This document shows positions 23,204 through 40,371 of a stretch of DNA of 64,000 nucleotides, in pieces. The stretch covers positions 176,016 to 240,015 of the IMG/VR virus record IMGVR_UViG_3300047499_000113. One strand, 5' to 3'. The notes beneath the pieces are model-generated. The model saw only the letters and a program-made list of their open reading frames with translations. It ran no database searches and was not told the DNA's origin. A program made the translations under genes and the position numbers. How positions within the stretch are numbered: position 1 is the stretch's first letter; each line of letters starts with the position of its first letter.

Positions 23204-26200
23204 TCAGCTACAGCCGGTCGTTTGACCGCACGAAGTGCACAGGTAGCACGACCCATTGCGCTGCGTGATGCTGCCGCACCGAGCGCACGGAGGGCCACCG
23301 AGATTCTTGCGGGGAGGAACAGGCTCTTCCGCCGTAGCGACGGCCTGGATGCGTGTCGACGAATCGGGCTCCTTCGAGATTCCCTCGCGAACGTCCATTG
23401 CCGGCGGAGGAGCTTCAGACGCCTTCATCTGAGCGAGCTTCTCCTCGAGGCCCGAGTGCGAGCCGCCGTAGTAACGGACATCGAGCACCTTGAACAGGTA
23501 GTCGTACAGGCTCTTGGCGAACCTGATGTGCTTGTTCGAGGTGATGCCGGCGGGCTCGAACCTCGTATCGACGAAGCTTTGGATGAGCTTCGGCAGAGGC
23601 ACGCCATACTGAAGAGCGATGCTCATCAGCTGCGTGAATCCGTCGATGAGGCCCGAAATCGTGCTTCCTGGCTTTCCGAGCTTGAGGAATACCTCGCCCG
23701 GTCGCCCGTCCGCGTATTCGCCGACGATGATGTATCCCTTGTAGCCGTCGATCTCGAACTTGTGGCGCCAGCTGTTGACCTCGGCGGGCAGCTTCTCACG
23801 ACGTGCTCCAGCGGCCTTCGCTTCCGCGATGAGCTGGTCGACCGGAGGAGCCTTCGGCGCCGGCGCGGGCCTGATCCCTTCCTTGTCGCCGTCCTTCTTG
23901 GTAGAAAGAGGCTGCGAAGCCTTGCACCCGTCACGGTAGAGCGCGATGCACTTGAGCCCGAGCCGCCAGCTCTCCTCGTAGATCTTGGCGATTTCCTCGG
24001 CCGTGATCTCGCTCGGAAGATTGACGGTCTTGCTCATCGCGCACGTGATGAGCGGTTGTATGGCCGCCATCATCTTGATGTGCGCCATGGGCGAAAGGTA
24101 TCGACCGCCAGGTGCAGAAGGCATTGCGCAGTCGAATACTGGAAGGTGCTCGGGCTTGAGACCCGGAGCGCCTTCGATGGTGCCGTTGTCCTCGAGGGAC
24201 TTGCAGATGGTGTTGATCTGGTCTTCGGCGTAGCCGAGTCCGAGAAGCGCGTCACGTACGCCCGTGTTCACCAGGCGCAGAGAGCCTCCGCCCACCATGC
24301 TCTTGTAGCTCACGAGCGAGAACGCCGGCTCGATGCCGGTGGTGCTCATTCCCATGAGGAACGAGATGGTGCCGAGAGGCGCCTGGAGAGAAGCCTGCGA
24401 TACCGAGTAGCCGTACCTCTCACCAAGAGCGATTGCCTCGCGCCACACCTCGGCCGACGTCGGAACCACGTCGTCCCCGGTCGGAGACGACTCGAGATGC
24501 CAGCGCTTGATGATGGTCGCATCAGCTTCTTGATGCATCTTCATCACGCGGAGCATGTCCTCGCGGTTCAGCTCGAAATCCGGGAACGAGCCGACACGCG
24601 CCGCGAGCTTCGCCGCGGTGACGTAGACCATGCCCGTCATGAGCGATGCCATCTGCGCAGCTACCGCACGACCTTCGTCGGTGTCGTAACCGTAGCCGAG
24701 CTTCATCAACAGCGCTCCGAGGTCGCCGTAGTTCGTCCCGATGGGGCGCAGCTTGTGCGAGTTGTGCGCGATCTCTTCGGTCGGGTAATCCGCCTTGTCG
24801 ATGATCGCCATCTGCGAGGTCGAGAACAGGCGAACAGCCTGCTCGAAACGCGCCTTGACGAACTTGCGACCGTCGAAGAACTTCGTCAGGTTGATCGCGC
24901 ACAGGTTGCACGCCGTGTTGTCGACATGCAGGAACTCGCTGCAGTTGTGAGCCACCACCCCGTCAGCAATCAGAGAGCTCGTCTCCGGCTCCGTGATGTC
25001 ATAAACGAGGGTTTGCTCGCCTTTGTCGACGACCCTTACGACTTCATCGGTCCATTGATCACGGCCGTTGTTGTTCACGCCTTCCGGGATTTCGTCCAAA
25101 CGCGCCTGCTTGCGTGAGGAGAGGAGACCCACTTCGAGCATAAGAGATTTGAAGGTACGCAGACTCTGTCCAGTGATGACGAGATCGTTCGTTTTTTCCT
25201 TGGACGGGTAAGTCCGGACTTCCCCAGATTTGGTCGTATACGTGAACGACGGCTTATCGCCAGGACGCCGATCCTTATAAAGAGTGCTGTTGACGCCGAG
25301 GTTCAGAAGAAGAGCCTGCACTCCGCGCAGAAGTTCCAGGCTGGTGGAGCTGAAGCGAGCGTCGACGTTCTTCTTCGGCTGGATGTTGAAAGTCCCATCC
25401 GCAGAGAACAGGCCAGAGAGGAACGAGAGCTGCTCCAGTCGAGTGGAGCAAAAAACCGCGTCCATCACTTTCTTGACTGGAGCCTTCGTTCCCGGCTCGC
25501 AAGAAAGCGTGGACATTAGTTGCCAGACAGCCTTTCGGTGAATACGGACATAGTCCGGACTTTCACCCACAGAGCCGTCCTGACGCTTCAACGAGTATGG
25601 GATGTCGTTCCGTTCGAAGAACTTCGAGACGGTATCGAGGACGTCCTTGTCGTCACGACCGAACAGAAGGCCAACCTCGTGAGTGTTTCTGCAGGGGAGA
25701 GGTCGCAGAACCCAGCCGTCGCCGACGACCCAGCCGGCGAGCTTATGCCACATCAGGCGATCGTCGACAGCAGAGAAAGCTTTTTGAGCCTCCGTCGGGA
25801 GGCATGGCTCAGCACCCTTCTCAGAGAAGGCTCCCTGTCCGGCCTGAAGCATCAGGATGCTTTCATCCGTCAGATCGCGCGCTTCAACCCAGCCGTCCTT
25901 GGTCATGAGGCGATGATCATGGGTGACTTTGATGACACGGCCTCGACGCGTGTGAACCTCGACGAGGTGATGGACACCGGTCGGGAAGACGACCGCGTCC
26001 TTGAGCTGAGGACCGTCCGGAGTTTGGACGAGAGTGCGGAATGTCGGTTTATTCGAGTCAAAAGACTCGAACTCGGAGCAGAGATCCTCAATTCGCACGA
26101 GTCCATGCTCAGTGGCGATCCTAGTGTCCGGATGGAAGCACGGATTGCTCGCACGGATCGGACCACTCTTGGGAGTGGTGTGCCACCTGTTGATGGCGTC

Positions 26201-27289
26201 CGTGAACTGCACGCCAGGGTCTCCACAGACCCACGCGGCTTGAGCGATCTCGTTCCACAGCTCACGTGCCTTGTACTTGTGAACTGTCTTGCCCGAGCGG
26301 CGTTCCTTCGTTTCCCACTGCCCGTCGTCGAGCATGGCCTGCATGAAGGAGTCCGGCACCGACACTGAGTTGTTGGCCGCCTGGAATCGAATCCGCTTGT
26401 AGGCCCCATTCGGATCGTCGTACGCAGCCGAGTAGCCCGCCGCCACGAGCGCGTGAGCAAGCTTCTCCTCTTCCGCCTTGCAGCGGATGAAGCCCGGACG
26501 TCCATCGCGAGTCTGTAGCACGTCGGGATGGTCCATGTCCATCACGACCATCTTGGCCGCGTTGCGTGTGGCGCCGCCTGACTTCATCGCCTTGGCGTAG
26601 GCGTCGAGTCCTTCCATCCACGAGATTGGACCGGACGTGTACGAGCCAGACGAGATCTTCTCGTAAGAGGAACGGAGCTTCGAGATGTTGGCGCCGGAAC
26701 CAGATCCTGAACGGAAAATCTTCATCTCCGCGGTCTGATACTTCATGATGTCTTCGATGGAGTCGTTGACATCTTGGATGAAGCACGCCGAGGCCATCTG
26801 AGCGCGGCCGGCGATACCGAGATTGAACCACACAGGCGAGTTGAACGCGCCGTACTGGTGGAGAAGAGCGTAGCAAAGCTCCTCCTCGAACACCTGCGCG
26901 TCCCTGTCCGTGTTGAAGTATTTCTGCTCCTCGGCCCAGCGGCGGAGAGTCGAGCATACGCGCTGGAAGACTTGCTTGACGGAAGTCTCACGCACGCCGT
27001 TGATCACGCGGAAGTATTTATCCGCAACGACGTTGATGTTGTTCTGAGTCCACCACGCGGGCACCTCGATGTCCTTCTGAAAGAACACCACGTCGCCCTT
27101 GGCGTTGCGGATCTCAGCATCGGCACGACGCCACTCCACCTCGTCGAAAGGATGGACGCCGTCCTTCGTGAAAACACGGGGCCAGTGACCAGCTTCTTTG
27201 GCGATGCGCGCTTGCTCCGACGACAGATCAGCACGGGTCCCTTTCAGGATCGGTACCACTTGTGCTGACATTACGCTAGCGCTTGACAT
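23204..27289 (-). CDS. nrdJ: Class II (B12-dependent) ribonucleotide reductase with intein
   Basis: FNSPVW, SACF, NPC|SE, ACNLCAINL, APLGTIS, SKTVN, YRDG, C-terminal TSCPD-like region and Zn ribbon. Confidence 0.93.
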   Translation of the reverse strand: MSSASVMSAQVVPILKGTRADLSSEQARIAKEAGHWPRVFTKDGVHPFDEVEWRRADAEIRNAKGDVVFFQKDIEVPAWWTQNNINVVADKYFRVINGVRETSVKQVFQRVCSTLRRWAEEQKYFNTDRDAQVFEEELCYALLHQYGAFNSPVWFNLGIAGRAQMASACFIQDVNDSIEDIMKYQTAEMKIFRSGSGSGANISKLRSSYEKISSGSYTSGPISWMEGLDAYAKAMKSGGATRNAAKMVVMDMDHPDVLQTRDGRPGFIRCKAEEEKLAHALVAAGYSAAYDDPNGAYKRIRFQAANNSVSVPDSFMQAMLDDGQWETKERRSGKTVHKYKARELWNEIAQAAWVCGDPGVQFTDAINRWHTTPKSGPIRASNPCFHPDTRIATEHGLVRIEDLCSEFESFDSNKPTFRTLVQTPDGPQLKDAVVFPTGVHHLVEVHTRRGRVIKVTHDHRLMTKDGWVEARDLTDESILMLQAGQGAFSEKGAEPCLPTEAQKAFSAVDDRLMWHKLAGWVVGDGWVLRPLPCRNTHEVGLLFGRDDKDVLDTVSKFFERNDIPYSLKRQDGSVGESPDYVRIHRKAVWQLMSTLSCEPGTKAPVKKVMDAVFCSTRLEQLSFLSGLFSADGTFNIQPKKNVDARFSSTSLELLRGVQALLLNLGVNSTLYKDRRPGDKPSFTYTTKSGEVRTYPSKEKTNDLVITGQSLRTFKSLMLEVGLLSSRKQARLDEIPEGVNNNGRDQWTDEVVRVVDKGEQTLVYDITEPETSSLIADGVVAHNCSEFLHVDNTACNLCAINLTKFFDGRKFVKARFEQAVRLFSTSQMAIIDKADYPTEEIAHNSHKLRPIGTNYGDLGALLMKLGYGYDTDEGRAVAAQMASLMTGMVYVTAAKLAARVGSFPDFELNREDMLRVMKMHQEADATIIKRWHLESSPTGDDVVPTSAEVWREAIALGERYGYSVSQASLQAPLGTISFLMGMSTTGIEPAFSLVSYKSMVGGGSLRLVNTGVRDALLGLGYAEDQINTICKSLEDNGTIEGAPGLKPEHLPVFDCAMPSAPGGRYLSPMAHIKMMAAIQPLITCAMSKTVNLPSEITAEEIAKIYEESWRLGLKCIALYRDGCKASQPLSTKKDGDKEGIRPAPAPKAPPVDQLIAEAKAAGARREKLPAEVNSWRHKFEIDGYKGYIIVGEYADGRPGEVFLKLGKPGSTISGLIDGFTQLMSIALQYGVPLPKLIQSFVDTRFEPAGITSNKHIRFAKSLYDYLFKVLDVRYYGGSHSGLEEKLAQMKASEAPPPAMDVREGISKEPDSSTRIQAVATAEEPVPPRKNLGGPPCARCGSITQRNGSCYLCTSCGQTTGCS
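24944..26140 (-). mobile_element. 399-aa intein with LAGLIDADG homing endonuclease
   Basis: Starts CFHPDT after SNP; ends VYDI...VAHN before C-S-E; blocks LAGWVVGDG and FLSGLFSADG. Confidence 0.92.
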
Positions 27290-28190
27290 CCTTCGCCTCC
27301 TCAGACAACCGAATCACTTCCAACTCCAGACCAAAGCGCGCCCAAGGACTACCGCGTTTGTGCGCGATGTCCAGGTCGCAAAGCGTGTCGATGGACCGTT
27401 GTAGCGACTGCTTGGTCCATAGACCCTTGCGAGTTACGTACATCCGCTTGAGAACAAACGGATGGACCCCGAGAGTTATGGCGGCCCGGTCGTCGGGTGC
27501 CTTGCTCTCCGCCAGCAGCTCGAACCGCAGCTGCTGAAGTACATGACGCTGCATGTACGCGAGGACCCACCCAGTCTCATCGGTGCGCTCCTGGAGCTTG
27601 TCGAGAAAAGCGAGCGCTCTGGCGGTTTGTCCGTCGCATAACGAGTCAACAACTTCTTTCGGGGTCAGCTCGGCAGAGAAACAGAGGAGGGAGCGTGCTG
27701 CGTCCGGTGATACGACGCTACCTTTTGGCGTGACCAATGCAAGCTTGTCCACCTCTGTAGCGAGCTTACGAAGACTGCTTCCAGAGTTCACAAAAAGAGC
27801 ACCCGCTACTCTCGATAGATCTATGTTGTGCCTTTGACCCTCTTTTAGGATCCAGCCGAGCACTTCGTTGTTTTCCGGATATGACTTCAATTTTGGAAAT
27901 TTCAACGCGCGCTTGGCCTTCGGGTGCGTGAGTGGCTTCTTGCTGAGGACAATCAGCGTGTCATGCTCGTTGACGGGGAGCGCAGGCACCTCCTTAGCAT
28001 CCCAAATGACGTACGCGCGCTTTCCTCCGCCAAGGAGGCAGCACGACGACTCCTGCAGATATTCATCGAGCCCCGCTGAAGTGGCATCGAATTGCAGCAC
28101 TTCTTCAGCGAGACTGAGACGAGCCTCGTCCTGAGCGGCCCGCTCCATCAACAGCTCTTCCTCGCCACTGATGAGGACCAAGACCGGCAT
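27276..28190 (-). CDS. holA: DNA pol III delta subunit-like
   Basis: 'LISGEEELL', 'EVDKLAL', 'LGVHPF', 'LCDLDIAHKRG'; start uncertain. Confidence 0.75.
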   Translation of the reverse strand: MPVLVLISGEEELLMERAAQDEARLSLAEEVLQFDATSAGLDEYLQESSCCLLGGGKRAYVIWDAKEVPALPVNEHDTLIVLSKKPLTHPKAKRALKFPKLKSYPENNEVLGWILKEGQRHNIDLSRVAGALFVNSGSSLRKLATEVDKLALVTPKGSVVSPDAARSLLCFSAELTPKEVVDSLCDGQTARALAFLDKLQERTDETGWVLAYMQRHVLQQLRFELLAESKAPDDRAAITLGVHPFVLKRMYVTRKGLWTKQSLQRSIDTLCDLDIAHKRGSPWARFGLELEVIRLSEEAKDVKR

Positions 28191-28201
28191 GGACTGGTAG
28201 C

Positions 28202-29023
28202 TTACACCAGAGACACCAGATGGGTAGCCATTCTCAGCCAATGGATCTCGGCGCTCGCGGACGGCACGGAGAGTAGAGCGGAGCTGTATCTGAGAATCGT
28301 CACCAACTGATCGGTCGTGGCTTTCTTGAACTTCGCTGCGGTGAGCGCTGCTTCGCGACAAACGTGCGCTACGCACTCTCGTTGCAGGGGTTCTTTGGCC
28401 TCTTTGACGACCTCCGGTACGGAGTCAGTCAGTAGACTGGCCTTGCCCTCGCACGCACGCATGAGGATGTCGAACAACTCGGCGTGCTTGGTGCCGCCCT
28501 CGTTTTCGAACATAGCATGGAAGAGTCCGGGCCGTCCGCCACACAAGATGAGCGCTTTGCTGTCTTCGCCGGATCCGAAGGCGACGGCGAAGTTGCGCAT
28601 CTCCATGAGAGACAAGAGCTTCCATCGAATGGTGCAACGGAATCTCGAGCGGATCGCGGGCTGCAGGAGCCCATCGTCCGGCACCACAAACACGATGCAC
28701 GAATGATCGCCCGGCTGCTCGAGAAGCTTGAGATACGCGTCCTGCGCAGCCTCCGTCATCGTATGCGCATCATCAACGATGACGTACCTATTCGGTGACG
28801 AGAGCGGGTGCGTCTTGCAGAATTCGACCGCCTCGCGAGCCGAATCGATACTTTTGTCTGCCAGGAAGAGATCCGTCTCTGCCGTCAGCTCAGATAGGGT
28901 GTCCCTCAGGAACGTCGCTTTGCCCACGTGCGACGGACCCGTCAGGCACAGACTCCTGGCCGAGCTGTCCAGAGCCACCTTCAGCTTCGACTGCGCTGGG
29001 GAGTTGCCGAAGATTTGCGTCAA
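28202..29023 (-). CDS. holB: DNA pol III delta-prime subunit-like
   Basis: GPSHVGK, 'DDAHTMTEAAQDAYLKLLEQP', 'LQPAIRSR'. Confidence 0.8.
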   Translation of the reverse strand: MTQIFGNSPAQSKLKVALDSSARSLCLTGPSHVGKATFLRDTLSELTAETDLFLADKSIDSAREAVEFCKTHPLSSPNRYVIVDDAHTMTEAAQDAYLKLLEQPGDHSCIVFVVPDDGLLQPAIRSRFRCTIRWKLLSLMEMRNFAVAFGSGEDSKALILCGGRPGLFHAMFENEGGTKHAELFDILMRACEGKASLLTDSVPEVVKEAKEPLQRECVAHVCREAALTAAKFKKATTDQLVTILRYSSALLSVPSASAEIHWLRMATHLVSLV

Positions 29024-30966: not shown

Positions 30967-32499
30967 CTAACCCGCATGGGCGACACGATTGTCGTTCGCG
31001 AGAGAGCGGTTGATAGCCGCCGTGACACGCTCTTCCGATACGTGGAACCGGGCCGAAATTCCGGGGATGCCCATGCCCATATCGAAGAGGGAGGAGAACA
31101 GTTCGGTCCTGGCCAGCACGACCGGCCCGAACAGGGCCGTGCCGGCGATGTCAGCCACGGTGCAACCGTGTTTGGAGGCGATGCGCTCGGCCATCTCGTC
31201 CGTGACGACGTCCGGCATGTCCTGCGCCTGAAGCTTGCGGTGCGCGCTCGCAATGAGGCGGTGGACCTTGGCCACCGGCAAGTCGGATTTCTCCGAGTAT
31301 TGCCGAACGCTCATGTCGCCGAGATCCACCGACACGAGGACGTCTGCCTCCTCGTCCGACAGATTGGCCGAGTCGACCAGGCGCTTGACGTCATGCCAGC
31401 CCTCGGCCTGCACGAACTTGCTGATGGCGCCGTTGTCGCGGATGACACGCTGGATGGTGGACGGGTCGTCGCTTTCCTTGTCGTCGGAGTCCCAGGCGAC
31501 CGTCTCCTTGTCGCTGAATTCGGGCGACATGCCCTTGTTGAGGACCATCGTCGAGAGGTCCTCTGCACGACCCATGCGCTTGAAGTCGTTGACGACTTCG
31601 TGGTCGATCACCATCTCGGCGTACTTGAGCAGGCCCGCATCGATCCCGTGCTTCGGATCGCGCCGCATGATGTAGAGCGGGGAGCTTTTCACGAGGTTCT
31701 GCCGGCGCCAGTCGCGCAGGAACGGCCGCAGTTGCGAGTCGTTCCAGCGGAGCTTGCGAACCGCGTCGACCACGTCCGCGCTGCTCCAGCGATGCGAGAG
31801 CGACAGCCCGCGCGAACGTAGCAGCTCGCGCCCGTGGTCGCAAACCGGGCACGCCTGCACACGAGAAAGGTGGTAGTGGTTGCTGCAGTAGCCCATCGCG
31901 TAGTGCTTGCGGTTGCAGTCGCCGTAGCCGCACAGGTCGCCACGCTTAGGGATGGACTCGATCTTCTCCTGGCACTCGTGCTCGGTCAGCTCCGAGGGCT
32001 TGAGCTTGCCCTGCCGGTAGAGCGACTCGAGCGCGCCGAAGTCGTTCGGCCCGTAGCCCAGCAGGCGCAGCACCTTCGTCGAGTCGATGGTGTGGCTCTG
32101 GATGGAGTAGAAGTAGCGCTCGTAGTCGAACTTCGCGTAGTCGAGAAGATCCGACACACGGAAGATGGACGTGTCGAGCGCGGGGTCGCTGCGACGCTTG
32201 CCGTAGACGGGGACGACCGCGCCCGTGTACGTGAGCATCACGCCGCCGAGGATGAGTTCGGCCTGCTTCTTGTCGACCAGCTCGTCGGTCAGGTGCTTGA
32301 AGAACCAGCGACCGATGAAGTTCTTGGACAGGAGGCGCAACCGCACGTTCTGCGCGGTGTCCTGGCAGCGCTCCTTATCGCGCTTGAAGTGCCGCGCCAC
32401 CTTGCCCGCAGTCCAGTGATACCACTGCTTGAGGAAAGACTGGTTGGTGGGAATGGCGATGGGGTGAAGCGCAGGCACAGACAGAGACGACCGGCTCAT
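30967..32499 (-). CDS. Sigma-like protein with inserted Zn finger and C-terminal DnaA-domain-IV-like HTH
   Basis: Region 2-like 'ERCQDTAQNVRLRLL'; CGYGDC...GYCSNHY; region 4 'LSDEEADVL...VHRLIASAHRKL'; 'IASKHGCTVADIAG...VVLAR...GISARF'. Confidence 0.6.
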   Translation of the reverse strand: MSRSSLSVPALHPIAIPTNQSFLKQWYHWTAGKVARHFKRDKERCQDTAQNVRLRLLSKNFIGRWFFKHLTDELVDKKQAELILGGVMLTYTGAVVPVYGKRRSDPALDTSIFRVSDLLDYAKFDYERYFYSIQSHTIDSTKVLRLLGYGPNDFGALESLYRQGKLKPSELTEHECQEKIESIPKRGDLCGYGDCNRKHYAMGYCSNHYHLSRVQACPVCDHGRELLRSRGLSLSHRWSSADVVDAVRKLRWNDSQLRPFLRDWRRQNLVKSSPLYIMRRDPKHGIDAGLLKYAEMVIDHEVVNDFKRMGRAEDLSTMVLNKGMSPEFSDKETVAWDSDDKESDDPSTIQRVIRDNGAISKFVQAEGWHDVKRLVDSANLSDEEADVLVSVDLGDMSVRQYSEKSDLPVAKVHRLIASAHRKLQAQDMPDVVTDEMAERIASKHGCTVADIAGTALFGPVVLARTELFSSLFDMGMGIPGISARFHVSEERVTAAINRSLANDNRVAHAG

Positions 32500-32669
32500 C
32501 TTTTCGCATCTCCGTGCGGCGGTTGTACCGCCGGCTGAGTGGAGGGTTGCTGCTACTCGAGAATGCCCGCCCTATGCGGACTGGGCGGAGAGTACAGAGC
32601 CTAGCATGGTGACTAGGCTGCCACAATCATTCGCGAACAAACTGGAAACCGCTTCGATAACTTACACTC

Positions 32670-32813
32670 TGTGGGTGAACTGTGGACGGATCTGTGGAAG
32701 ACTTGTGGATGTTGTAATTGTACGCCTCAAAAAGGCTCGAAAAACCCGGCTCCGAATGCGTCCACAGGCTGTGGACGCGAAGACCTGTGGACGAACACGT
32801 CAAATTATGAATA
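32670..32813. promoter_or_regulatory. Cluster of seven DnaA-box-like TGTGG(A) motifs; candidate replication origin
   Basis: Motifs at 32670, 32681, 32693, 32704, 32758 (reverse), 32770 and 32786 in a non-coding gap, followed by a short AT-rich stretch. Confidence 0.65.
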
Positions 32814-32878
32814 CGTTTCGGGGCCATCCGAACGGATGACCCCGATTCGCCGGTCCAGAATACCGCAGAAATACCCGA

Positions 32879-33739
32879 TCAGGGGTTCGCGGAAACCTGG
32901 GCCTCGGTGAAGTGGAAAGGATGCGCTCGGCTGTAGCGCTCCGCCCAGTCATAGCGAACGTCGCCTTTGGGGCAGTCACCCATCTCGCCCGTGAACTGGC
33001 ACAAGCGAGCGTGATTGCGGATGCTGCGGCGAGCGATGTGAAGGGCCACGCGACACGCCGACTGGCGATTGAGCATCCCTGCGGGCGTCACGAGCGTGCC
33101 GTCGTCGGGCTCCTGATCGGCGTACGTCCACTCTTGCTTGTTGATGTCGCGAGTGTCGTCGTCGTAGTTGGCTGGGATGGTGTAGATGCCGCCTCTGTCA
33201 GGATGGACTTGCCAGATGCTGTGAGCAAGCCCGCCATCGCAGAAGCCCGACCAGCCCATGGTCTTGCGCCCCTCCTCGGACGCGCGCCATACGCGGTCGT
33301 TGCATTTGCCCTCGTCCACGTAAGCGAGAAAGCTCGTCTCGTGGAAAGCGATGGACACCATCATAGTCGCCGTACGTGCCTTTGTGGAGTCGTCCCTCCA
33401 CATCGGAGGCTCGGTTGGGTCGAGAACCACCGTCGCGATGTCGCGAGAGATGTCCTCGTATGAGGCACTGCGACCGGGGATCGGAGTGACCGCCGATTTC
33501 ATTGCCGTCAAGAGGTAGTCAGCGAGTTGCCCAACCTTGGCATTGTCCTTCTTCTCGGAAGTTGCCTCCGGCTGTACAGGCACCTCTGTGGGGATGAGCA
33601 CGGCTGCACTGTTGACTGACTGCATCGAGGCCACTGCCACAGAAGCCTTCGGCTGTTCTGCCGAGGCCACTGCAACGATGACCACAAATGCGGCCAGGCC
33701 ACAGAGGGCCGCGGCGCACCGGATCAGAGTCTTGTACAT
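32879..33739 (-). CDS. Secreted/anchored lysozyme- or transglycosylase-like protein
   Basis: Hydrophobic N-terminus; 'IAFHETSF' and 'SIWQV' resemble SLT motifs; AGGAG ribosome-binding site. Confidence 0.45.
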   Translation of the reverse strand: MYKTLIRCAAALCGLAAFVVIVAVASAEQPKASVAVASMQSVNSAAVLIPTEVPVQPEATSEKKDNAKVGQLADYLLTAMKSAVTPIPGRSASYEDISRDIATVVLDPTEPPMWRDDSTKARTATMMVSIAFHETSFLAYVDEGKCNDRVWRASEEGRKTMGWSGFCDGGLAHSIWQVHPDRGGIYTIPANYDDDTRDINKQEWTYADQEPDDGTLVTPAGMLNRQSACRVALHIARRSIRNHARLCQFTGEMGDCPKGDVRYDWAERYSRAHPFHFTEAQVSANP

Positions 33740-33837
33740 CACGAATCTCCTTGTATGGGGTCTTGAAGGAAGAAAGAGGAGCCGGAGCAGTATACAATTG
33801 TACTGCTCAGACTTGAAACTGGCAAATAAAATTCGAG

Positions 33838-34152
33838 TTACGAGTCTACAGGCTTCCACTCCAGATACTGAGTGAGGCCCGCTAACCCAGGTCTGCCAGT
33901 CTCGTATTTCAATACCGCTCTGTGGACTTTGTAGGGACCCTCGATGTGCCGGCTCTTTCTAGAGTCACGCGGGTTCTTGAGCACGACACTGAATTCCACC
34001 ACGGTCCCTTGGCCAAGGAGCGGGAGTTCGCCCGCACGAAACTCCAGGTGCACGGGTAAATCCGTGAAAACGAAGATCGTTCGCACGTTCCCTCCGCCCG
34101 AAACGACTCCGGGCGTCTTCAGCACCATTGCTCCTTCTGCTTCACGATTCAC
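33838..34152 (-). CDS. Hypothetical protein
   Basis: 104 aa. Confidence 0.5.
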   Translation of the reverse strand: MNREAEGAMVLKTPGVVSGGGNVRTIFVFTDLPVHLEFRAGELPLLGQGTVVEFSVVLKNPRDSRKSRHIEGPYKVHRAVLKYETGRPGLAGLTQYLEWKPVDS

Positions 34153-34569
34153 CGTCTACGTCCGTATCTTCTGTACTTCCACCGTCTCCGTCACCGCTAG
34201 CTTCGCTACCGCCACACGCTCCTTCGGAGCTTCATCTTCCGTCGTCGTTGTTTGAGCAAGAAACTTGATCGAAGGATCAAGAAGAGAAGATCCTTTGGGG
34301 AAAGGATCTTTTTCACAAGGTTGCGGAATGGAACCGGTTGCTCGTGAAACGAGGACGTCCGTGAGCATTGGACGAACCGACTGCTTCTTGATGCAATCTT
34401 CCTGGGTCTGTGCCACCGCCCGAAGGCTAGGGACTTCTCCTCGTTGAACTGTGCTCCGAGGATCGGTCCCCACTGAGCATGTATTGTCATACATGGTCAC
34501 GGTCTTGCTCCCTGCAGCGAGGACTCTACAGCGCAGTGACGCGAGCGCGACCGAAGTATAATTGTCGAG

Positions 34570-35298
34570 ATGAAGAAGAACGGGCGAGGAAAGCCTCTGG
34601 ACCGGGAAGAAGTAGATCGTCACATCGACGACTGCCTCCGAAGGCTCCGGTGCGGCAAAGACGCTCCATACTTCCGCTCTCTGCTTGAGGGAATGGTTTA
34701 TCAGGGCGTAGTGCCTCTAGACCTGCTACGGAAGGTGCCCGCTCCTGCACAGGAAGCCGGCAAGACGCGCTTTGACCAGCTCTACGGGGCTGCGATGCAG
34801 CTCGTGTTCCCCGACTACAGAGAAGAGACGCTCCGGCGCTTTCTCGGTCCTGAGGCTCCCGTCACGGAGGACAAAATCTGGCGCGTCATGTTCCCCGAGA
34901 AATTCGGCATGACTCACGTGTTCATGCGCGCAGGAACTTTCCAGCAGGCGTTCGCTCTCGGATGCGACTACGCGTGTCGCGTTCACATGCGTGCGTTTGC
35001 GACGATCCCATCGGACCTCACCATTCGGGTGATGTTTGTCTCCGAGAGGGCCCTTCGTCGAATACTCGACATGCGTTGGGCGGCCAAGACTCACAAGCGA
35101 ATGCAGCTCAAGCTTGTGGGCAGGGAGTTCACGCCGCGGATGCTCAAAGGCGCGAGGCTCGCGGCGCTCGGTCATCCGGACAGCCCTATGCACTCGATAG
35201 CCAGGTACGCCGAGATGAAGGACCTCGAGAAGGTTCGAAAGTCCAAAGGACGAGTGCGTACGTCGCCGGTCGAATCGGAATCTTTTCGCAGAAAATGA
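34570..35298 (+). CDS. Hypothetical basic protein
   Basis: 242 aa; TATAAT 7 nt before the ATG. Confidence 0.65.
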   Translation: MKKNGRGKPLDREEVDRHIDDCLRRLRCGKDAPYFRSLLEGMVYQGVVPLDLLRKVPAPAQEAGKTRFDQLYGAAMQLVFPDYREETLRRFLGPEAPVTEDKIWRVMFPEKFGMTHVFMRAGTFQQAFALGCDYACRVHMRAFATIPSDLTIRVMFVSERALRRILDMRWAAKTHKRMQLKLVGREFTPRMLKGARLAALGHPDSPMHSIARYAEMKDLEKVRKSKGRVRTSPVESESFRRK

Positions 35299-35341: not shown

Positions 35342-36517
35342 ATGCAAGACGGCAAGTTCAACGTCATCATTGACGCTTTTTGGGGTTCATCTGGCAAGGG
35401 CAAGACCTCGACGTGGTTGGCCGACAAGTTTTCGGTCACCCGTGTGTCGTCTTCGAACTTCCCGAACGCCGGCCACACAGCCGCTTTCGAGGACGGGACG
35501 AAGTTCGTGGCTAAGGCCATCCCCACTGCCGCCATTCTCAAGAAGACTCGAGGCATGGGCGTCGAGTGCTTTCTTTCACCGGGTTCCGGTTTCGCGTGGG
35601 CGCAGCTCGTCAAGGAGTGGAAGGAAGCCGGCAAGCCGACCATCCGCATCCACGAACGAGCCAGCATCGTCACCGACGACCACGCAAAGCGAGAGCGTGA
35701 AGGCGCGGAGTCGACGATGCACATAGCGTCGACGATGCAGGGTTCGGCTGCGGCAATCGTGGACAAGGTGCTTCGCAAGGCGGACTGCCAGCTCGCGTGG
35801 AACACCGTCGACGAAGTGATGCGCGGATTCGAGGGCACGATGAGCCCCGAGTTCGCCGAGTCGGTTCGCGTACTCAAGGCCGACGCTTTCCGCGCAATGT
35901 CGCAGGGCGCGGTCCTCGACGAGGGCCACACGTGGCTGCACGAGGGCTCTCAGGGCTTCTCGCTCTCCATCGACCATGGCTCTCACTACCCGCACTGCAC
36001 GAGTCGAAACTGCACGGTGCAAGCGGCGCTCGATCACATGGCGATGCCGCCGCAGGTCCTCGGCGACGTCTATCTCAATCTGCGCACTCGACCCATACGC
36101 GTAGGGAACGTCGTGGACAATGGCATCCAGAAGGGTTACTCGGGCGATTTCTACCCGGACTGCAAGGAGATGACCTGGGAGCAGGTCGCGGCAGAGTCCG
36201 GGATGCCGGCGGAGGAAGCGAAGATCCTGGCCGAGCGCGAGCGCACAACGGTGACCAAGCGCATCCGCCGCGTCTGCAACTTCACCTTCGTGGGCCTGCG
36301 CGACGCCGTGCGCACCAACGGCGCCACGAAACTCTGCCTCAACTTCATCCAGTACGTCAACTGGGAAGACCGTGGCCTCAAGGGAGGCCGGGACGCCTTC
36401 GACAAGCTCTCGAAGAAGAGCCGCGCGTTCATCGATAGGGTCGAGGAGGCCGCGCAAGTGCCGGTCGTGCTCGTGGGAACCGGCGCGCTTCATGATGAAA
36501 TGATAACTCTCTTGTAG
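35342..36517 (+). CDS. purZ: PurZ-type N6-succino-2-amino-deoxyadenylate synthase (PurA paralogue)
   Basis: WGSSGKGK (Ser where PurA has the Asp of GDEGKG), PNAGHT, EGSQG.SL, YPHCTSR, PIRVG, TTVTKRIRR, LNFIQY in place of the TKLD-type motif. Confidence 0.82.
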   Translation: MQDGKFNVIIDAFWGSSGKGKTSTWLADKFSVTRVSSSNFPNAGHTAAFEDGTKFVAKAIPTAAILKKTRGMGVECFLSPGSGFAWAQLVKEWKEAGKPTIRIHERASIVTDDHAKREREGAESTMHIASTMQGSAAAIVDKVLRKADCQLAWNTVDEVMRGFEGTMSPEFAESVRVLKADAFRAMSQGAVLDEGHTWLHEGSQGFSLSIDHGSHYPHCTSRNCTVQAALDHMAMPPQVLGDVYLNLRTRPIRVGNVVDNGIQKGYSGDFYPDCKEMTWEQVAAESGMPAEEAKILAERERTTVTKRIRRVCNFTFVGLRDAVRTNGATKLCLNFIQYVNWEDRGLKGGRDAFDKLSKKSRAFIDRVEEAAQVPVVLVGTGALHDEMITLL

Positions 36518-36538: not shown

Positions 36539-36990
36539 TGATTCAAAAGAAGCGCCGCTGCAACGTCTGTAAGAAGAAGAAGACTCTCGATGAGTTCTAC
36601 AGGAACTCAAAATTCCCACTGGGCCGTACATATACGTGCAAGCTTTGTATGAATGAAGCGGGCACGGCGAGGTACCAGCGGAACAAGGAAGAAATCAATC
36701 GGAAGAGGCGAGAGGAAACCAGACGCCTGAAACTTGAAGTGGTCGATGGGTATGGCGGGCACTGCGAGTGCTGCGGTGAAGACCGGTGGCAGTTTCTCAA
36801 CATCGACCATCGCAATGGGGGCGGGACAGCTGAACGACGAAATGCCAAGAACAAGAATCCACTTTTCTTTTACAAACGGCTCGTCGCCGAGGGTTTCCCT
36901 AAAGAAAAGTTCCGTTTGCTCTGTTGGAATTGCAATTTGAGCATTGGTCTATACGGGTCGTGTCCACACACAGAAGAGAAAGTCGCATGA
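36538..36990 (+). CDS. Free-standing HNH-type endonuclease
   Basis: CNVC, CKLC, CECCG, NIDHRNG, LCWNCN; same family as 18777-19373. Confidence 0.8.
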   Translation: MIQKKRRCNVCKKKKTLDEFYRNSKFPLGRTYTCKLCMNEAGTARYQRNKEEINRKRREETRRLKLEVVDGYGGHCECCGEDRWQFLNIDHRNGGGTAERRNAKNKNPLFFYKRLVAEGFPKEKFRLLCWNCNLSIGLYGSCPHTEEKVA

Positions 36991-37572
36991 CCGACGAAGA
37001 TCTCTTCTACGATCCTGAGTCGGTCTATAACTTCAAGGTGAAGAAAGTGGCGCGCGTTCCGTCGGGTGAGAAGATGCATGACCTCGTCGTCCGAGACGGC
37101 TACGCGCTCTTTTGGGGCGAGTGGCCGTCCAACTGGACGTGGGCGCCCTTCACTCTCGACGGCGTGCGGTATAACTGCACCGAACAGCACATGATGGCAG
37201 AGAAAGCTCGGCTCTTCAAGGATGAGCAGGCTCTCCGCCACATCATGAAGGCTACGGACCCGGCGAACCAGAAACGCTATGGTCGGCAGGTAAAGGGCTT
37301 TGACGAACGTAGATGGTCGTCAGTCTGCTACGACATCGTGCTTCGTGGGAATCTCGAGAAGTATCGGCAAAACCCGGAGCTTTGCGAGAAGCTCCTGGCG
37401 ACCGGGAATCTCCATTTTGTCGAGGCTAGCCCCAAGGATAAAGTGTGGGGCATCGGTATGGACAAACATCACCCCGACGCGACAAAACCCCGGCAAATGG
37501 CTCGGCAAAAATCTGCTCGGGAAAGTGCTCGACGAAACCAGGCGTATCATCAGGCAGGAGCGTGGGTTGTGA
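36987..37572 (+). CDS. NADAR family N-glycosidase, interrupted by a 1-bp frameshift near 37484-37491
   Basis: SNW, TEQHMMAEKARLF, GRQV, EASPKDKVWGIG in one frame; the conserved WLGKNLLGK end is in the next frame. Confidence 0.8.
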
Positions 37573-38057
37573 GCCAGCTCGTGGACTTCTACGCCGGCGC
37601 CGGCAAAGACCACGCGGGCCGCAAGATCGACGACATTTGGGCTTGGGATGAAGACAAGCTCGAGAACGTTCACGACTACATCCAGTGGCTCTTCCCGAAC
37701 AGGGCCCCGAGCCGCTTCAATCCGGAGGCTCCGCTACTGACCGACGAAGACGCACAAGCTTTCAAGGAAAGCACTTACCTGTCGTCGCGAGTTCTGCGCT
37801 CGTTCGACATGATGTGCGCGTTCTATCGCGTTGGCTCCATGCAGTGCAAGCGTGCAGGCGTGAACGAGGGCCCGCCGTACTGGTGGGACAGCTTCGCGCA
37901 TTCGCACAATTGGCTGCGGATGACCCGCATCATGCTCTGCATGACCGAGGTCGGCTACCAAGACAACGCAAAAACTTTTCTCGAGTGCATCGAGAAAGCG
38001 ACTCTTCCGGACAGCAAAACGCGGCTCTTTTGGCGAGCCGCAGCGGGCGTGAAATGA
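37569..38057 (+). CDS. OGFr N-terminal-like domain protein
   Basis: LENVHDYIQWLFP, HNWLRMTRI; GTGA overlap with the NADAR stop. Confidence 0.8.
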   Translation: MSQLVDFYAGAGKDHAGRKIDDIWAWDEDKLENVHDYIQWLFPNRAPSRFNPEAPLLTDEDAQAFKESTYLSSRVLRSFDMMCAFYRVGSMQCKRAGVNEGPPYWWDSFAHSHNWLRMTRIMLCMTEVGYQDNAKTFLECIEKATLPDSKTRLFWRAAAGVK

Positions 38058-39036: not shown

Positions 39037-40371
39037 ATGAGCGACATCAAGACAGAAGTCTTTTGCCTCACAGCCCCGGACGGCCGTCTGTTGCCACCTG
39101 CTGTACAGGCAACGGTACTCGCCAAGTATTCCCGATCGCCACTGTCGGCGCGGCAAATCGTCGCGTCGCTGACGGAGGAAGAGGCGGACAAGTTCCAGGA
39201 GAAGTGGGTCATCGGGTACAACCACTCGAGCGTCGCTGAGTTGGCTGTTTTGCCGATTTGCTTCGAGGGCGTGTCCATCGTCGCTTCCAAATTCCTGGAA
39301 TCCTTCCAAAGGCCCGGGTACTCGGAAAAGAGTACACGTTACCAGGTCTTCTCTCGCGATTCCTTCGTCACGCCACCTGGTGCGCCGGCGACAATGCAGA
39401 AGTTTGCCGCCAGGTTCTACGACGCGTACGAAAGCCTGTATCCGAAGGTCCTGCAGCGTGTGGCCAAGCTCACCGGCAAGGACCCGGAAGACCGATTGGT
39501 CAAGGCTCGAACATTCGACAACGTCAGGTATCTGCTGCCCGCCGGGACCGGCACGAACCTAGCCTGGGTCGGCAATGCGAGAGACGCTCGCTACCTCATT
39601 TCCGCAGCTCGAGGTCACACCAACCCCGAGATCCGGATGCTCGGCGATATGGCAGCGAAAGCCGTGGCAGAGATGTGCCCGGTGTTCGTGCAGAAGGCCG
39701 ATGCGGACTCATTCGAACCGCCGATTCGGAGCCTCGGCAATCTCAGCCCGAAGTTCGACTTCTCCAACCCGAACTGGTACGTCGACTTGCATCGCAAGCA
39801 TCTATTGCCAGACTCGGCGCTCGTGCAGAAGTCCTTCGAGGCAGCGATAGCTGACCGCCACGGCATGAGTTGGTCTGCTTTCTCGAAGCTCATGGAGTCC
39901 CGTGGACCCCGAGCGGTACCCAGGGTGTTCCGCACAATCCAGCTCTCGTTCGACATCATGATGGACTACGGAGCGTATCGCGACCTGCAGCGGCACCGCA
40001 GGTGTGAGCAATACGCCGAGCCCCTGCACCCCAACTACGGATTCCTCGTCCCGGACGACATTCTCGGGACCGAACTCGAGCAGGAGTACCGGGCGGCAAT
40101 GCAAGCGGCCCACGCGTACGACGACGAAGCGGTCGTGCACGACCCCGACCTGATGCAGTACATGGTTCCACTCGGATACCTGCACCGGTCGGTCTTCGAC
40201 ATGGACGCTCAGGAGGTTTATTACCTGTCCGAGTTGAGGACGCAGCCTCAAGGCCACATCTCGTACCGGCGAGTGGCGTACGAACTGAGTCGTGTGGCGG
40301 CGGCCAGGCTCCCTCAGGTCTTCCAGTGGTGCCGGGCCATCAAGCCGGAGGCAATCGGCGAACACAAGTGA
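39037..40371 (+). CDS. thyX: Flavin-dependent thymidylate synthase, long two-domain type
   Basis: GYNHSSVAE, SEKSTRY, RYLLP, RDLQRHR, ELRT..QGH.SYR. Confidence 0.85.
   Translation: MSDIKTEVFCLTAPDGRLLPPAVQATVLAKYSRSPLSARQIVASLTEEEADKFQEKWVIGYNHSSVAELAVLPICFEGVSIVASKFLESFQRPGYSEKSTRYQVFSRDSFVTPPGAPATMQKFAARFYDAYESLYPKVLQRVAKLTGKDPEDRLVKARTFDNVRYLLPAGTGTNLAWVGNARDARYLISAARGHTNPEIRMLGDMAAKAVAEMCPVFVQKADADSFEPPIRSLGNLSPKFDFSNPNWYVDLHRKHLLPDSALVQKSFEAAIADRHGMSWSAFSKLMESRGPRAVPRVFRTIQLSFDIMMDYGAYRDLQRHRRCEQYAEPLHPNYGFLVPDDILGTELEQEYRAAMQAAHAYDDEAVVHDPDLMQYMVPLGYLHRSVFDMDAQEVYYLSELRTQPQGHISYRRVAYELSRVAAARLPQVFQWCRAIKPEAIGEHK

What the first reader, a model, noticed from the sequence alone, without database searches (positions are those of the whole stretch)
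32670..32813. Helically phased DnaA-box-like array near the coding-strand switch: oriC-like origin
Seen: TGTGGGTGA (32670), TGTGGACGG (32681), TGTGGAAGA (32693) and TGTGGATGT (32704), spaced 11, 12 and 11 bp; a perfect inverted pair GCGTCCACAG-g-CTGTGGACGC (32758-32778); TGTGGACGA (32786); then CAAATTATGAATA. Established: the DnaA box reads TGTGGATAA on one strand. Genes to the left are mostly minus strand and genes beyond about 34.5 kb mostly plus strand, as expected for bidirectional replication starting near here. Inference: a chromosome-like origin used by host DnaA or by an element-encoded initiator.
Basis: partly seen in the sequence, partly recalled or inferred. Interest (0 to 1): 0.72.

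Follow-up and report, generated by a model that had tools for sequence, protein, structure and literature searches.

The report
DnaA-box array before phage sigma gene
A huge phage from moss carries one conserved cluster of seven DnaA-box-like sites just upstream of the early promoter of a sigma-like gene whose product ends in a DnaA-type DNA-binding domain; it looks more like a control site for that promoter than a proven replication origin.

Summary
The window is the end of an incomplete huge-phage genome from a moss metagenome.

- **Location.** The array lies in a 379-bp gap between two minus-strand genes. It sits 42-170 bp upstream of the -35 of a conserved sigma70-type promoter for the 510-aa gene at 30967-32499.
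- **Conservation.** Three clades of related huge phages keep the same boxes (consensus YCKTCCACAG) at the same place. The four proximal boxes keep 11/12/11-bp spacing while the spacers drift. At least three lineages lost the array, and most relatives never had it.
- **Resemblance to DnaA sites.** The core, the trailing G and the 2-3 bp spacers match the tandem DnaA-box arrays found in many unrelated phages and the "double DnaA box" of E. coli.
- **Possible binders.** No phage DnaA exists. However, the 510-aa protein combines a sigma region 4 with a C-terminal homologue of DnaA domain IV.
- **Against an origin.** GC skew does not change here, no extended AT-rich unwinding element or DnaA-trio is present, and the strand switch is about 1.4-1.8 kb away.

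Best reading: an operator for DnaA-type domains controlling the early replication operon. An origin role remains possible but is unproven.

The parts
32669..32712 (-). Proximal array. Four head-to-tail 10-mers, read on the minus (gene) strand as ACATCCACAA, TCTTCCACAG, CCGTCCACAG and TCACCCACAG. Starts are 11, 12 and 11 bp apart, and the array forms a 23-bp higher-order repeat.
   Evidence: D1. The same 11/12/11 spacing is kept in L020, L022, L024 and L025 while the spacers differ.
32758..32794 (.). Distal boxes. The palindrome GCGTCCACAG-g-CTGTGGACGC (32758-32778) consists of one box on each strand. A third box, CTGTGGACGA (32785-32794), is oriented like the proximal array.
   Evidence: I6, I7. 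The outermost box TCGTCCACAG is invariant in six aligned relatives, and an inverted partner is kept at variable distance.
32713..32724 (-). Conserved block GTACAATT(G/A) just upstream of the proximal array. No function assigned.
   Evidence: Alignment A2.
32655..32661 (-). Conserved block GTTATCG between the last box and the promoter. No function assigned.
   Evidence: Alignment A2.
32798..32819 (.). Short AT-rich patch (75% A+T over 20 bp) between the upstream gene's terminator hairpin and the outermost box. It is too short for a classical unwinding element.
   Evidence: The ATAAnT core is conserved in relatives.
32818..32845 (-). Stem-loop that probably terminates the upstream lytic-transglycosylase-like gene. 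The stem shows compensatory changes in relatives.
   Evidence: I1.
32598..32626 (-). Sigma70-type early promoter: -35 TTGTGG (32626-32621), a 17-bp spacer, then the extended -10 TGcTAGGCT (-10 hexamer at 32603-32598). The predicted transcription start is near 32591.
   Evidence: Read. The same layout (TTGnnn, N17, TGnTAnnnT) is found upstream of nearly all relatives. The simple scanner did not list it, because its -10 matches only 3 of 6 without the TG.
32500..32590 (-). Conserved 5' leader. It contains the hairpin GCCGGCGG-tacaa-CCGCCGC (32516-32535), directly followed by the GGAG ribosome-binding site (32513-32510). An upstream ACTCC-like box could pair with the GGAG.
   Evidence: RNAalifold predicts 7 pairs, 4 of them with compensatory changes. 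There is no Rfam match.
30967..32499 (-). Gene for the 510-aa sigma-like protein. The N-terminal about 350 aa may be sigma-region-2-like (weak leads only). Residues about 355-427 form sigma region 4. Residues about 427-509 form a DnaA-domain-IV homologue.
32879..33739 (-). Upstream gene with a signal-peptide-like N-terminus and a lytic-transglycosylase-like motif. It has its own promoter (TTGCCA-17-TACAAT, 33825-33797). The real start is probably the ATG of MYKTLIR, not the mechanical GTG at 33859.
   Evidence: Synteny is kept in the relatives.
34153..34569 (.). The actual divergent strand-switch gap, between the 104-aa minus-strand gene (33838-34152) and the 242-aa plus-strand gene (34570-35298). 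It carries no DnaA-box-like sites.

Best explanation
The array is a conserved cis-regulatory platform made of DnaA-box-like sites. Seven 10-mers (consensus YCKTCCACAG) lie 42-170 bp upstream of the -35 of a host-type (sigma70, extended -10) early promoter. That promoter drives the sigma-like gene and, behind it on the same strand, unknown genes, clamp-loader delta'/delta genes and a class II ribonucleotide reductase.

I propose that proteins with a DnaA-type helix-turn-helix assemble cooperatively on the head-to-tail boxes, which are spaced 2-3 bp apart, and so raise or lower firing of this promoter. DnaA boxes control bacterial dnaA and nrd promoters in the same way.

There are two candidate binders, and they may compete:
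- host DnaA, since the phage has none of its own;
- the product of the adjacent gene, whose last 80 residues are a homologue of DnaA domain IV fused behind a sigma region 4. This would give autoregulation.

What is shown: the sites, their uniqueness, their conservation and fixed position relative to the promoter, and the fold and homology of the protein domain. What is inferred: that any of these proteins binds, the sign of the regulation, and that the downstream genes form one operon.
For: 1. The cluster is real and unique in 240 kb. The phased pair is also unique in a complete 393-kb relative.
2. Phylogenetic footprint. In relatives with 68-77% protein identity the boxes and the 11/12/11 spacing are kept while the spacers change. 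Boxes occur at the same place in three clades down to about 43% identity.
3. The array is always just upstream of the conserved promoter. The gap from the last box to the -35 is about 30-50 bp.
4. The core, the trailing G and the 11-12 bp period equal those of canonical tandem TTATCCACAGG arrays. In 120 IMG/VR loci, 78 had at least 2 canonical boxes, G followed ACA in 201 of 393 boxes, and spacings were 11 (118 times) or 12 (144 times).
5. E. coli DnaA binds in vivo mainly to pairs of boxes 2-3 bp apart, largely at genes of nucleotide synthesis and replication (PMC11317965).
6. No DnaA and no OmpR-type domain is encoded by the phage or by two relatives.
7. The adjacent protein carries a DnaA-domain-IV fold. 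VIA Z is 11.2 to 1j1v. In the domain-only model the top 8 PDB hits and the top 30 Swiss-Prot AFDB hits are all DnaA. There is also a sequence-profile bridge: E 1.5e-25 to P0124, which holds three PF08299 domains, and hhalign gives 95%.
8. The boxes conserve positions 4-10 but not 1-3. The phage domain lacks the arginine equivalent to E. coli R399 (L456 in its place). From memory, R399 reads the minor groove, so this point is a lead only.
Against: - No binding data exist.
- Box positions 1-3 read YCK, not TTA, and C at position 2 is itself conserved (38 of 46). Each box is therefore 2-3 mismatches from the E. coli consensus, and the host and its DnaA box are unknown.
- Array and protein domain are not tightly coupled. 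L197/L198 and L048 have arrays but their protein lacks the DnaA-IV domain. Most family members with the domain have no array. The recognition helix does not differ between the two groups.
- Only P423 (as P479) and the acidic residue at D433 (as E489) of DnaA's base-contact residues are kept.
- The array was lost in L023, L026 and L049 with the promoter intact, so it is not essential.
- RNA evidence for the promoter is lacking.
Confidence: 0.5

Rival explanations
1. This is an oriC-like replication origin. Host DnaA, or the phage DnaA-domain-IV protein, oligomerises on the phased boxes and opens nearby DNA, and replication proceeds in both directions. Transcription from the adjacent early promoter may assist, as at the lambda, T4 and T7 origins.
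For: - A single-copy DnaA-box-like cluster with oriC-like 2-3 bp spacing.
- It lies 1.4-1.8 kb from the main divergent strand switch.
- In the complete relative G001 the convergent switch (about 95 kb) lies about half a genome away from the array at 293 kb.
- It is next to replication genes: delta', delta and the reductase.
- A short AT-rich patch adjoins the outermost box.
- The phage has a DnaB-like helicase but no initiator of its own.
Against: - GC skew is unchanged across the site in both genomes. The detrended extremes in G001 lie elsewhere.
- There is no AT-rich stretch beyond 20 bp, and I saw no DnaA-trio run downstream of the boxes (definition from PMC8235120).
- The strand switch and synteny are the same in relatives that lack the array, and four complete relatives have no such array anywhere.
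- The adjacent protein has no AAA+ module.
- T5 shows that conserved paired DnaA boxes in a phage need not be an origin (10.1101/866236).
Confidence: 0.2
2. The sites are bound by an unrelated factor, such as a host OmpR/PhoB-type response regulator (these bind 7-bp direct repeats with an 11-bp period) or an unidentified phage protein. The likeness to DnaA boxes would then be coincidental.
For: - Eleven-bp phased direct repeats upstream of a promoter are typical of that regulator class (own knowledge).
- The 5' half of each box is not DnaA-like, and it has its own conserved C at position 2.
- The array is restricted to three clades, mostly of high G+C.
Against: - The phage encodes no winged-helix Trans_reg_C domain.
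- The seven conserved letters TCCACAG equal the 3' part plus flank of canonical DnaA-box arrays, including the 12-bp alternative spacing.
- Inverted boxes at variable distance (9, 16 or 17 bp start to start) fit monomeric readers such as DnaA better than obligate tandem dimers.
Confidence: 0.15
3. The array is a DnaA sink or tether rather than a regulator of the adjacent promoter. It would titrate host DnaA as phage copies accumulate, shutting off host initiation, or hold the entering DNA as proposed for the T5 injection-stop region.
For: - Tandem DnaA-box arrays are common in unrelated phages, in intergenic regions near terminase, recombinase or Rep genes.
- The T5 proposal offers a precedent.
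- Titration of DnaA by chromosomal sites has been described (PMC12371093, listed, abstract only).
Against: - The fixed distance to the promoter in three clades would not be needed for a sink.
- The boxes are weaker matches than the perfect TTATCCACA arrays of other phages.
- The array lies far from the contig ends.
Confidence: 0.1

Closest known systems
Double DnaA boxes and the low-affinity DnaA arrays of E. coli oriC (PMC11317965)
   Same: Head-to-tail 9-mers separated by 2 or 3 bp, so an 11-12 bp period. The CCACA core is shared. Individual sites are weak and would need cooperative binding. The sites lie upstream of genes for nucleotide synthesis and replication.
   Different: Positions 1-3 read YCK instead of TTA. 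The host and its DnaA are unknown, and binding is untested. The setting is a huge phage, upstream of a sigma-like gene.
The dnaA promoter / oriC region of bacteria, where DnaA boxes lie upstream of the gene for the protein that binds them (own knowledge)
   Same: A box cluster sits directly upstream of a gene whose product contains a DnaA domain IV. Replication genes follow.
   Different: The protein has no AAA+ domain III and no domains I-II. Instead it carries a sigma-like body. No unwinding element and no skew switch are present. Array and domain are not strictly co-inherited.
Conserved paired DnaA boxes in the T5 first-step-transfer region (bioRxiv 10.1101/866236)
   Same: A virulent phage with conserved DnaA boxes in pairs 3 bp apart, mixed with inverted repeats, at a place that is not the mapped origin.
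   Different: The T5 boxes are close to consensus and lie in the terminal repeat. Here the boxes are degenerate in the 5' half and promoter-proximal.
Tandem TTATCCACAGG arrays in many IMG/VR phage contigs (found here)
   Same: Same core, trailing G, orientation and 11-12 bp period. Mostly intergenic.
   Different: Those arrays are mostly perfect DnaA boxes in small unrelated phages, next to other genes (terminase, YqaJ, Rep).
Iteron origins of plasmids and P1, with direct repeats plus an inverted repeat beside the rep gene (own knowledge)
   Same: Direct repeats plus an inverted pair sit upstream of a gene for a DNA-binding protein. The element is single-copy.
   Different: Iterons are 17-22 bp at a period of about 22 bp and are bound by winged-helix Rep proteins. 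Here the units are 10-mers at 11-12 bp, and the neighbour is sigma-like.

Membership tests
oriC-type replication origin | Cluster of DnaA boxes | tested here: met
   Seven boxes with an exact (T/C)CCACA core lie within 126 bp, and the cluster is unique in the contig. The 5' halves deviate from consensus.
oriC-type replication origin | Adjacent AT-rich unwinding element and/or a DnaA-trio run | tested here: not met
   There is only a 20-bp patch at 75% A+T. Nothing stands out at 40 or 80 bp. I saw no in-phase trinucleotide run after the last box (read by eye against the definition).
oriC-type replication origin | GC-skew change at the site | tested here: not met
   The right-minus-left skew difference is -0.010 in G000 and 0.017 in G001. 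Larger differences occur at 73% and 52% of positions respectively. The extremes lie elsewhere.
oriC-type replication origin | Supports initiation (autonomous replication, replication bubbles) | not testable with these tools
   This needs wet-lab mapping or deep read-depth profiles. Read laying is limited to 6 kb and gave only sparse contigs.
DnaA box | 9-mer close to TTATCCACA / TT(A/T)TNCACA | tested here: inconclusive
   Positions 4-9 are exact in 6 of 7 boxes. Positions 1-3 give 2-3 mismatches per box, and the consensus is YCKTCCACAG. The host's DnaA-box variant is unknown.
DnaA box | Head-to-tail pairs 2-3 bp apart (cooperative binding geometry) | tested here: met
   Spacings are 11/12/11 bp here and in the relatives. 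The reference geometry is in PMC11317965.
DnaA domain IV (PF08299), for residues 427-509 of the adjacent protein | Fold | tested here: met
   VIA Z is 11.2 to 1j1v_A over 77 residues. In the domain-only model the top 8 PDB hits and top 30 Swiss-Prot AFDB hits are all DnaA, with TM by query 0.65-0.78.
DnaA domain IV (PF08299), for residues 427-509 of the adjacent protein | Match to the Pfam model | tested here: not met
   There is no PF08299 match in the contig or among 23 family members. hhalign against E. coli DnaA gives only 3-5% probability, although over the right region.
DnaA domain IV (PF08299), for residues 427-509 of the adjacent protein | Sequence-profile link to proteins that do match PF08299 | tested here: met
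   Profile A4 hits P0124 at E 1.5e-25. P0124 matches PF08299 at E 1.1e-29 with 3 copies. hhalign of A4 against P0124 gives 95.3%.
DnaA domain IV (PF08299), for residues 427-509 of the adjacent protein | Base-contact residues of E. coli DnaA (R399, P423, D433, H434, T435, H439; list from memory) | tested here: not met
   Only P423 (P479) is kept, plus an acidic residue at D433 (E489). R399 becomes L456, H434 becomes E490, T435 becomes R491 and H439 becomes A495.
Sigma-70 family, for the adjacent protein | Region 4 helix-turn-helix | tested here: met
   PF04545 matches 14 of 23 members, best E 7.8e-8. The PDB profile search finds sigma factors. VIA Z is 8.5-9.6 to region 4 of many sigma factors, over residues 355-427.
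Sigma-70 family, for the adjacent protein | Region 2 (core binding, -10 recognition) | tested here: inconclusive
   There is no Pfam region-2 hit for this protein. Weak leads only: Foldseek alignments to ECF sigma factors over about 150 columns, Atlas neighbours named Sigma70_r2 at score 0.88, and a relative with PF04542 at E 0.004.
Iteron-type origin | 17-22 bp iterons at a period of about 22 bp, next to a gene for a winged-helix Rep protein | tested here: not met
   The units are 10-mers at 11-12 bp, although two double boxes form a 23-bp repeat. The neighbour is sigma-like, not Rep.
OmpR/PhoB-type regulator site | Direct repeats with an 11-bp period and a cognate winged-helix regulator | tested here: inconclusive
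   The period fits. No Trans_reg_C domain is found in the phage or in two relatives. A host regulator cannot be tested because the host is unknown.

The most novel reading that the evidence does not exclude
The 510-aa protein is a new kind of phage factor: a sigma-like subunit carrying a DnaA-type DNA-binding domain. It would read DnaA-box-like sites itself. By docking on this array it would bring host RNA polymerase to one defined place and so both autoregulate and start transcription-primed replication there. That would be an origin licensed by a sigma/DnaA-domain fusion instead of an AAA+ initiator. The same domain could also occupy host DnaA boxes and interfere with host initiation.
Probability: 0.15. 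Interest if true: 0.85.

Novelty: new variant of a known kind. Interest (0 to 1): 0.62.

Why it matters
Almost nothing is known about how phages of 400 kb start replication or time their early genes. This locus offers a concrete, testable cis element: seven sites, conserved in three clades, single-copy. It also offers two defined candidate binders.

The neighbouring protein family has more than 190 members on contigs up to 436 kb. It joins a sigma region 4 to a homologue of the DnaA DNA-binding domain. I found no description of this architecture in the searched literature. If that domain reads DnaA boxes, huge phages would have a direct handle on the host's replication-control sites.

The side result could be followed up on its own: perfect tandem DnaA-box arrays are common in many unrelated phages.

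Tried and rejected
- **BLAST against deposited phages.** No match.
- **General phage promoter motif.** Rejected. TCCACA(G) is not enriched in the genome or in upstream regions.
- **Lineage-specific arrays of other sequence upstream of the same gene in array-less relatives.** None is significant, except a 74-bp tandem duplication in L023.
- **Phage-encoded DnaA or OmpR-type regulator.** Absent.
- **Second cluster elsewhere in the genome.** None. The one extra 'pair' in G001 is a weak hit inside an ORF.
- **Covariation of the P423-equivalent proline with array presence.** It looked promising: the proline is present in all array-bearing proteins of the first set and replaced by Q in L023/L026. 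It broke down with more data, because L175 has Q and L196 has A with arrays, while L049 and L018 have P without.
- **Protein-DNA complex prediction.** The job was not folded by the tool, so it is no evidence either way.
- **Sequencing runs.** The DNA contigs are identical, and the RNA contigs are too sparse to show a transcription start.
- **Host inference.** The only hit in genome contigs is a distant copy in a Lentisphaeria MAG.
- **Literature search by box sequence.** It returned only primer matches.
- **MraZ/AbrB-type GTGG repeats and CRP-like half-sites.** Considered from memory and dropped, because period and orientation do not fit.
- **Rfam.** Nothing.

Full report
**Source of the window.** The window is the last 64 kb (176016-240015) of a 240,015-bp IMG/VR virus record. 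CheckV rates the record 56% complete, which implies a phage of roughly 430 kb at 59% G+C. Public runs that hold it are moss metagenomes. It has no match among deposited phages.

Genes near the finding are typical of a huge phage with its own replication set:
- a class II ribonucleotide reductase with an intein, at 23204-27289;
- clamp-loader delta' and delta, at 28202-29023 and 27276-28376;
- a PurZ-like adenylosuccinate synthetase, at 35342-36517;
- ThyX.

**The observation.** There are six TGTGGA in 150 bp, against a contig-wide 0.44 per kb and a maximum of two in any other window. A weight-matrix scan gives seven sites here, at most three in any other 300 bp, and no other phased pair. The cluster is therefore real, non-random and single-copy in the 240 kb available.

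**Anatomy.** The array lies in a 379-bp gap between two minus-strand genes. Read on the gene strand, the order is as follows.
1. The stem-loop that ends the upstream lytic-transglycosylase-like gene.
2. A short AT-rich patch.
3. Box TCGTCCACAG.
4. Box GCGTCCACAG overlapping an inverted copy.
5. About 60 bp that end in GTACAATT.
6. Four head-to-tail boxes.
7. The block GTTATCG.
8. A sigma70-type promoter, 42 bp after the last box (TTGTGG, N17, TGcTAGGCT).
9. A leader of about 90 nt with a hairpin next to the ribosome-binding site.
10. The ATG of the 510-aa gene.

The 'extra' TTGTGG at 32621-32626 is the -35 of that promoter, not an array member.

**Comparison with relatives.** The 510-aa protein has more than 190 homologues on huge-phage contigs up to 436 kb. 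I collected about 70 loci.
- Nearly all carry the promoter and the leader hairpin, and the hairpin shows compensatory changes.
- The boxes are found in only three clades:
  - the window's own group plus L003 and L048;
  - L017, L047, L186, L191, L196 and L217;
  - L175, L197/198 and L216.
- In those clades the boxes are always in the same orientation and about 30-50 bp upstream of the -35.
- In the closest relatives the 11/12/11 spacing and the outermost box are invariant while the spacers differ.
- Forty-six sites give the consensus Y-C-K-T-C-C-A-C-A-G.
- The array was lost in L023 and L026 inside the first clade. It is also missing in L049 and absent from four complete relatives.
- In the complete 393-kb relative, the phased pair occurs only at this locus.

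This is the signature of a functional but dispensable protein-binding element tied to the promoter.

- In 78 of them at least two boxes are canonical. TTATCCACA is by far the commonest 9-mer, with TTTTCCACA and TTGTCCACA variants.
- G follows ACA in 201 of 393 boxes.
- The spacings are 11 or 12 bp.
- In the 18 loci I checked, most arrays are intergenic. They sit next to varied genes.

E. coli DnaA binds in vivo almost only to pairs of boxes 2-3 bp apart, largely at replication and nucleotide-synthesis genes (PMC11317965). T5-like phages keep eight paired boxes at a place that is not their origin (10.1101/866236). The array here shares the core, the trailing G, the orientation and the period. 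It differs in positions 1-3.

**Who could bind.** The phage and two relatives encode no DnaA and no OmpR-type regulator, but each has a DnaB-like helicase.

The unexpected result concerns the adjacent gene. Its AlphaFold model has pLDDT 88.6. Residues 355-427 form sigma region 4, with Z about 9, and PF04545 matches 14 of 23 members. Residues 427-509 form a DnaA domain IV:
- Z is 11.2 to the E. coli domain-DNA complex.
- Folded alone, the domain's top 8 PDB hits and top 30 Swiss-Prot AFDB hits are all DnaA.
- Pfam's model does not match it.
- However, a profile of the domain finds P0124, a protein with three bona fide PF08299 copies, at E 1.5e-25, and hhalign gives 95%.

So it is a divergent homologue, present once per genome. 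It keeps the proline equivalent to P423 and an acid at D433, but not R399, H434, T435 or H439. The N-terminal 350 residues are only weakly sigma-region-2-like.

**Is the adjacent protein the binder?** Adjacency and fold suggest it. So does the fact that the boxes conserve exactly the part that, as I recall it, the DnaA helix-turn-helix reads in the major groove.

The coupling is loose, however. L197/198 and L048 have arrays but no such domain within reach. Most proteins with the domain have no array. The recognition helix is the same in both groups. Host DnaA therefore remains at least as good a candidate, and both may compete. The complex-prediction tool did not fold the protein-DNA job, so it says nothing.

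**Origin or operator?** These points favour an origin:
- the array is single-copy;
- its geometry is oriC-like;
- replication genes are nearby;
- a divergent strand switch lies 1.4-1.8 kb away;
- in the complete relative, the convergent switch lies about half a genome away.

These points count against an origin:
- GC skew does not change at the site in either genome, and its extremes lie elsewhere;
- there is no AT-rich stretch beyond 20 bp and no trio run;
- synteny and the strand switch are the same in relatives without the array;
- the array has been lost repeatedly.

The constant position just upstream of a conserved early promoter is best explained by transcriptional control. I therefore rank an operator for DnaA-type domains first (0.5), an origin second (0.2), an unrelated binder third (0.15) and a DnaA sink or tether fourth (0.1).

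**Limits.** The host is unknown. The contig is incomplete. The RNA data are too sparse to confirm the promoter. Skew is a weak guide in phages. All binding and regulation steps are inferred.

Noticed in passing
window 32500-32590 (minus strand); same place in L003-L025 and others: A conserved 5' leader precedes the sigma-like gene across the whole family. It reads ACTCC-n-AGYCGGCGG-loop-CCGCCGCAYGGAGG, a hairpin abutting the ribosome-binding site. Four of its 7 pairs show compensatory changes, and ACTCC could pair with GGAG. It may be a translational control element. There is no Rfam match.
   Followed up: partly
window 32598-32626 (minus strand) and relatives: Nearly every relative has the same host-type promoter upstream of this gene (TTGACx, 17 bp, TGnTAnnnT). 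This marks the gene as an early gene read by host sigma70 polymerase.
   Followed up: partly
IMG/VR loci L051-L170: Perfect head-to-tail DnaA-box arrays (TTATCCACAGG, also TTTTCCACAGG and TTGTCCACAGG) with an 11-12 bp period occur in at least 120 unrelated phage contigs. Of the 18 loci whose context I checked, most arrays are intergenic. They lie next to terminase, YqaJ, Rep or DUF932 genes. Their role in these phages is unexplained.
   Followed up: partly
P0124 and other hits: The profile of the C-terminal domain finds 872 proteins. They include short stand-alone versions, a 299-aa protein made of three tandem DnaA_C domains, and long proteins with 4-14 repeated helix-turn-helix units.
   Followed up: partly
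window 35342-36517 (+): A PurZ-like adenylosuccinate synthetase (phrog_1211, E 6.8e-55) hints that the phage may replace adenine with 2-aminoadenine. That would alter how proteins read A-containing sites such as DnaA boxes and -10 elements. The partner genes (DatZ, MazZ) were not searched for.
   Followed up: no
window 23204-27289 (-): A class II ribonucleotide reductase is interrupted by an intein with a LAGLIDADG endonuclease domain.
   Followed up: no
L023:2709-2860: In this relative, a tandem duplication of about 74 bp occupies the place of the box array.
   Followed up: no
G001 (complete 393-kb relative), 0-160 kb: GC skew is strongly positive over the first 160 kb whatever the gene strand, and near zero over the rest. 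G000 shows the same over its first 65-115 kb. Neither transcription direction nor a simple two-replichore model explains this.
   Followed up: partly
window 36924-38057 (+) and 39037-40371 (+): A NADAR plus OGFr_N fusion protein, and a ThyX thymidylate synthase.
   Followed up: no
window 32879-33859 (-): The mechanical ORF start is probably too early. A promoter (TTGCCA-17-TACAAT, 33825-33797) and the ATG of MYKTLIR fit a secreted lytic-transglycosylase-like protein of about 286 aa.
   Followed up: no
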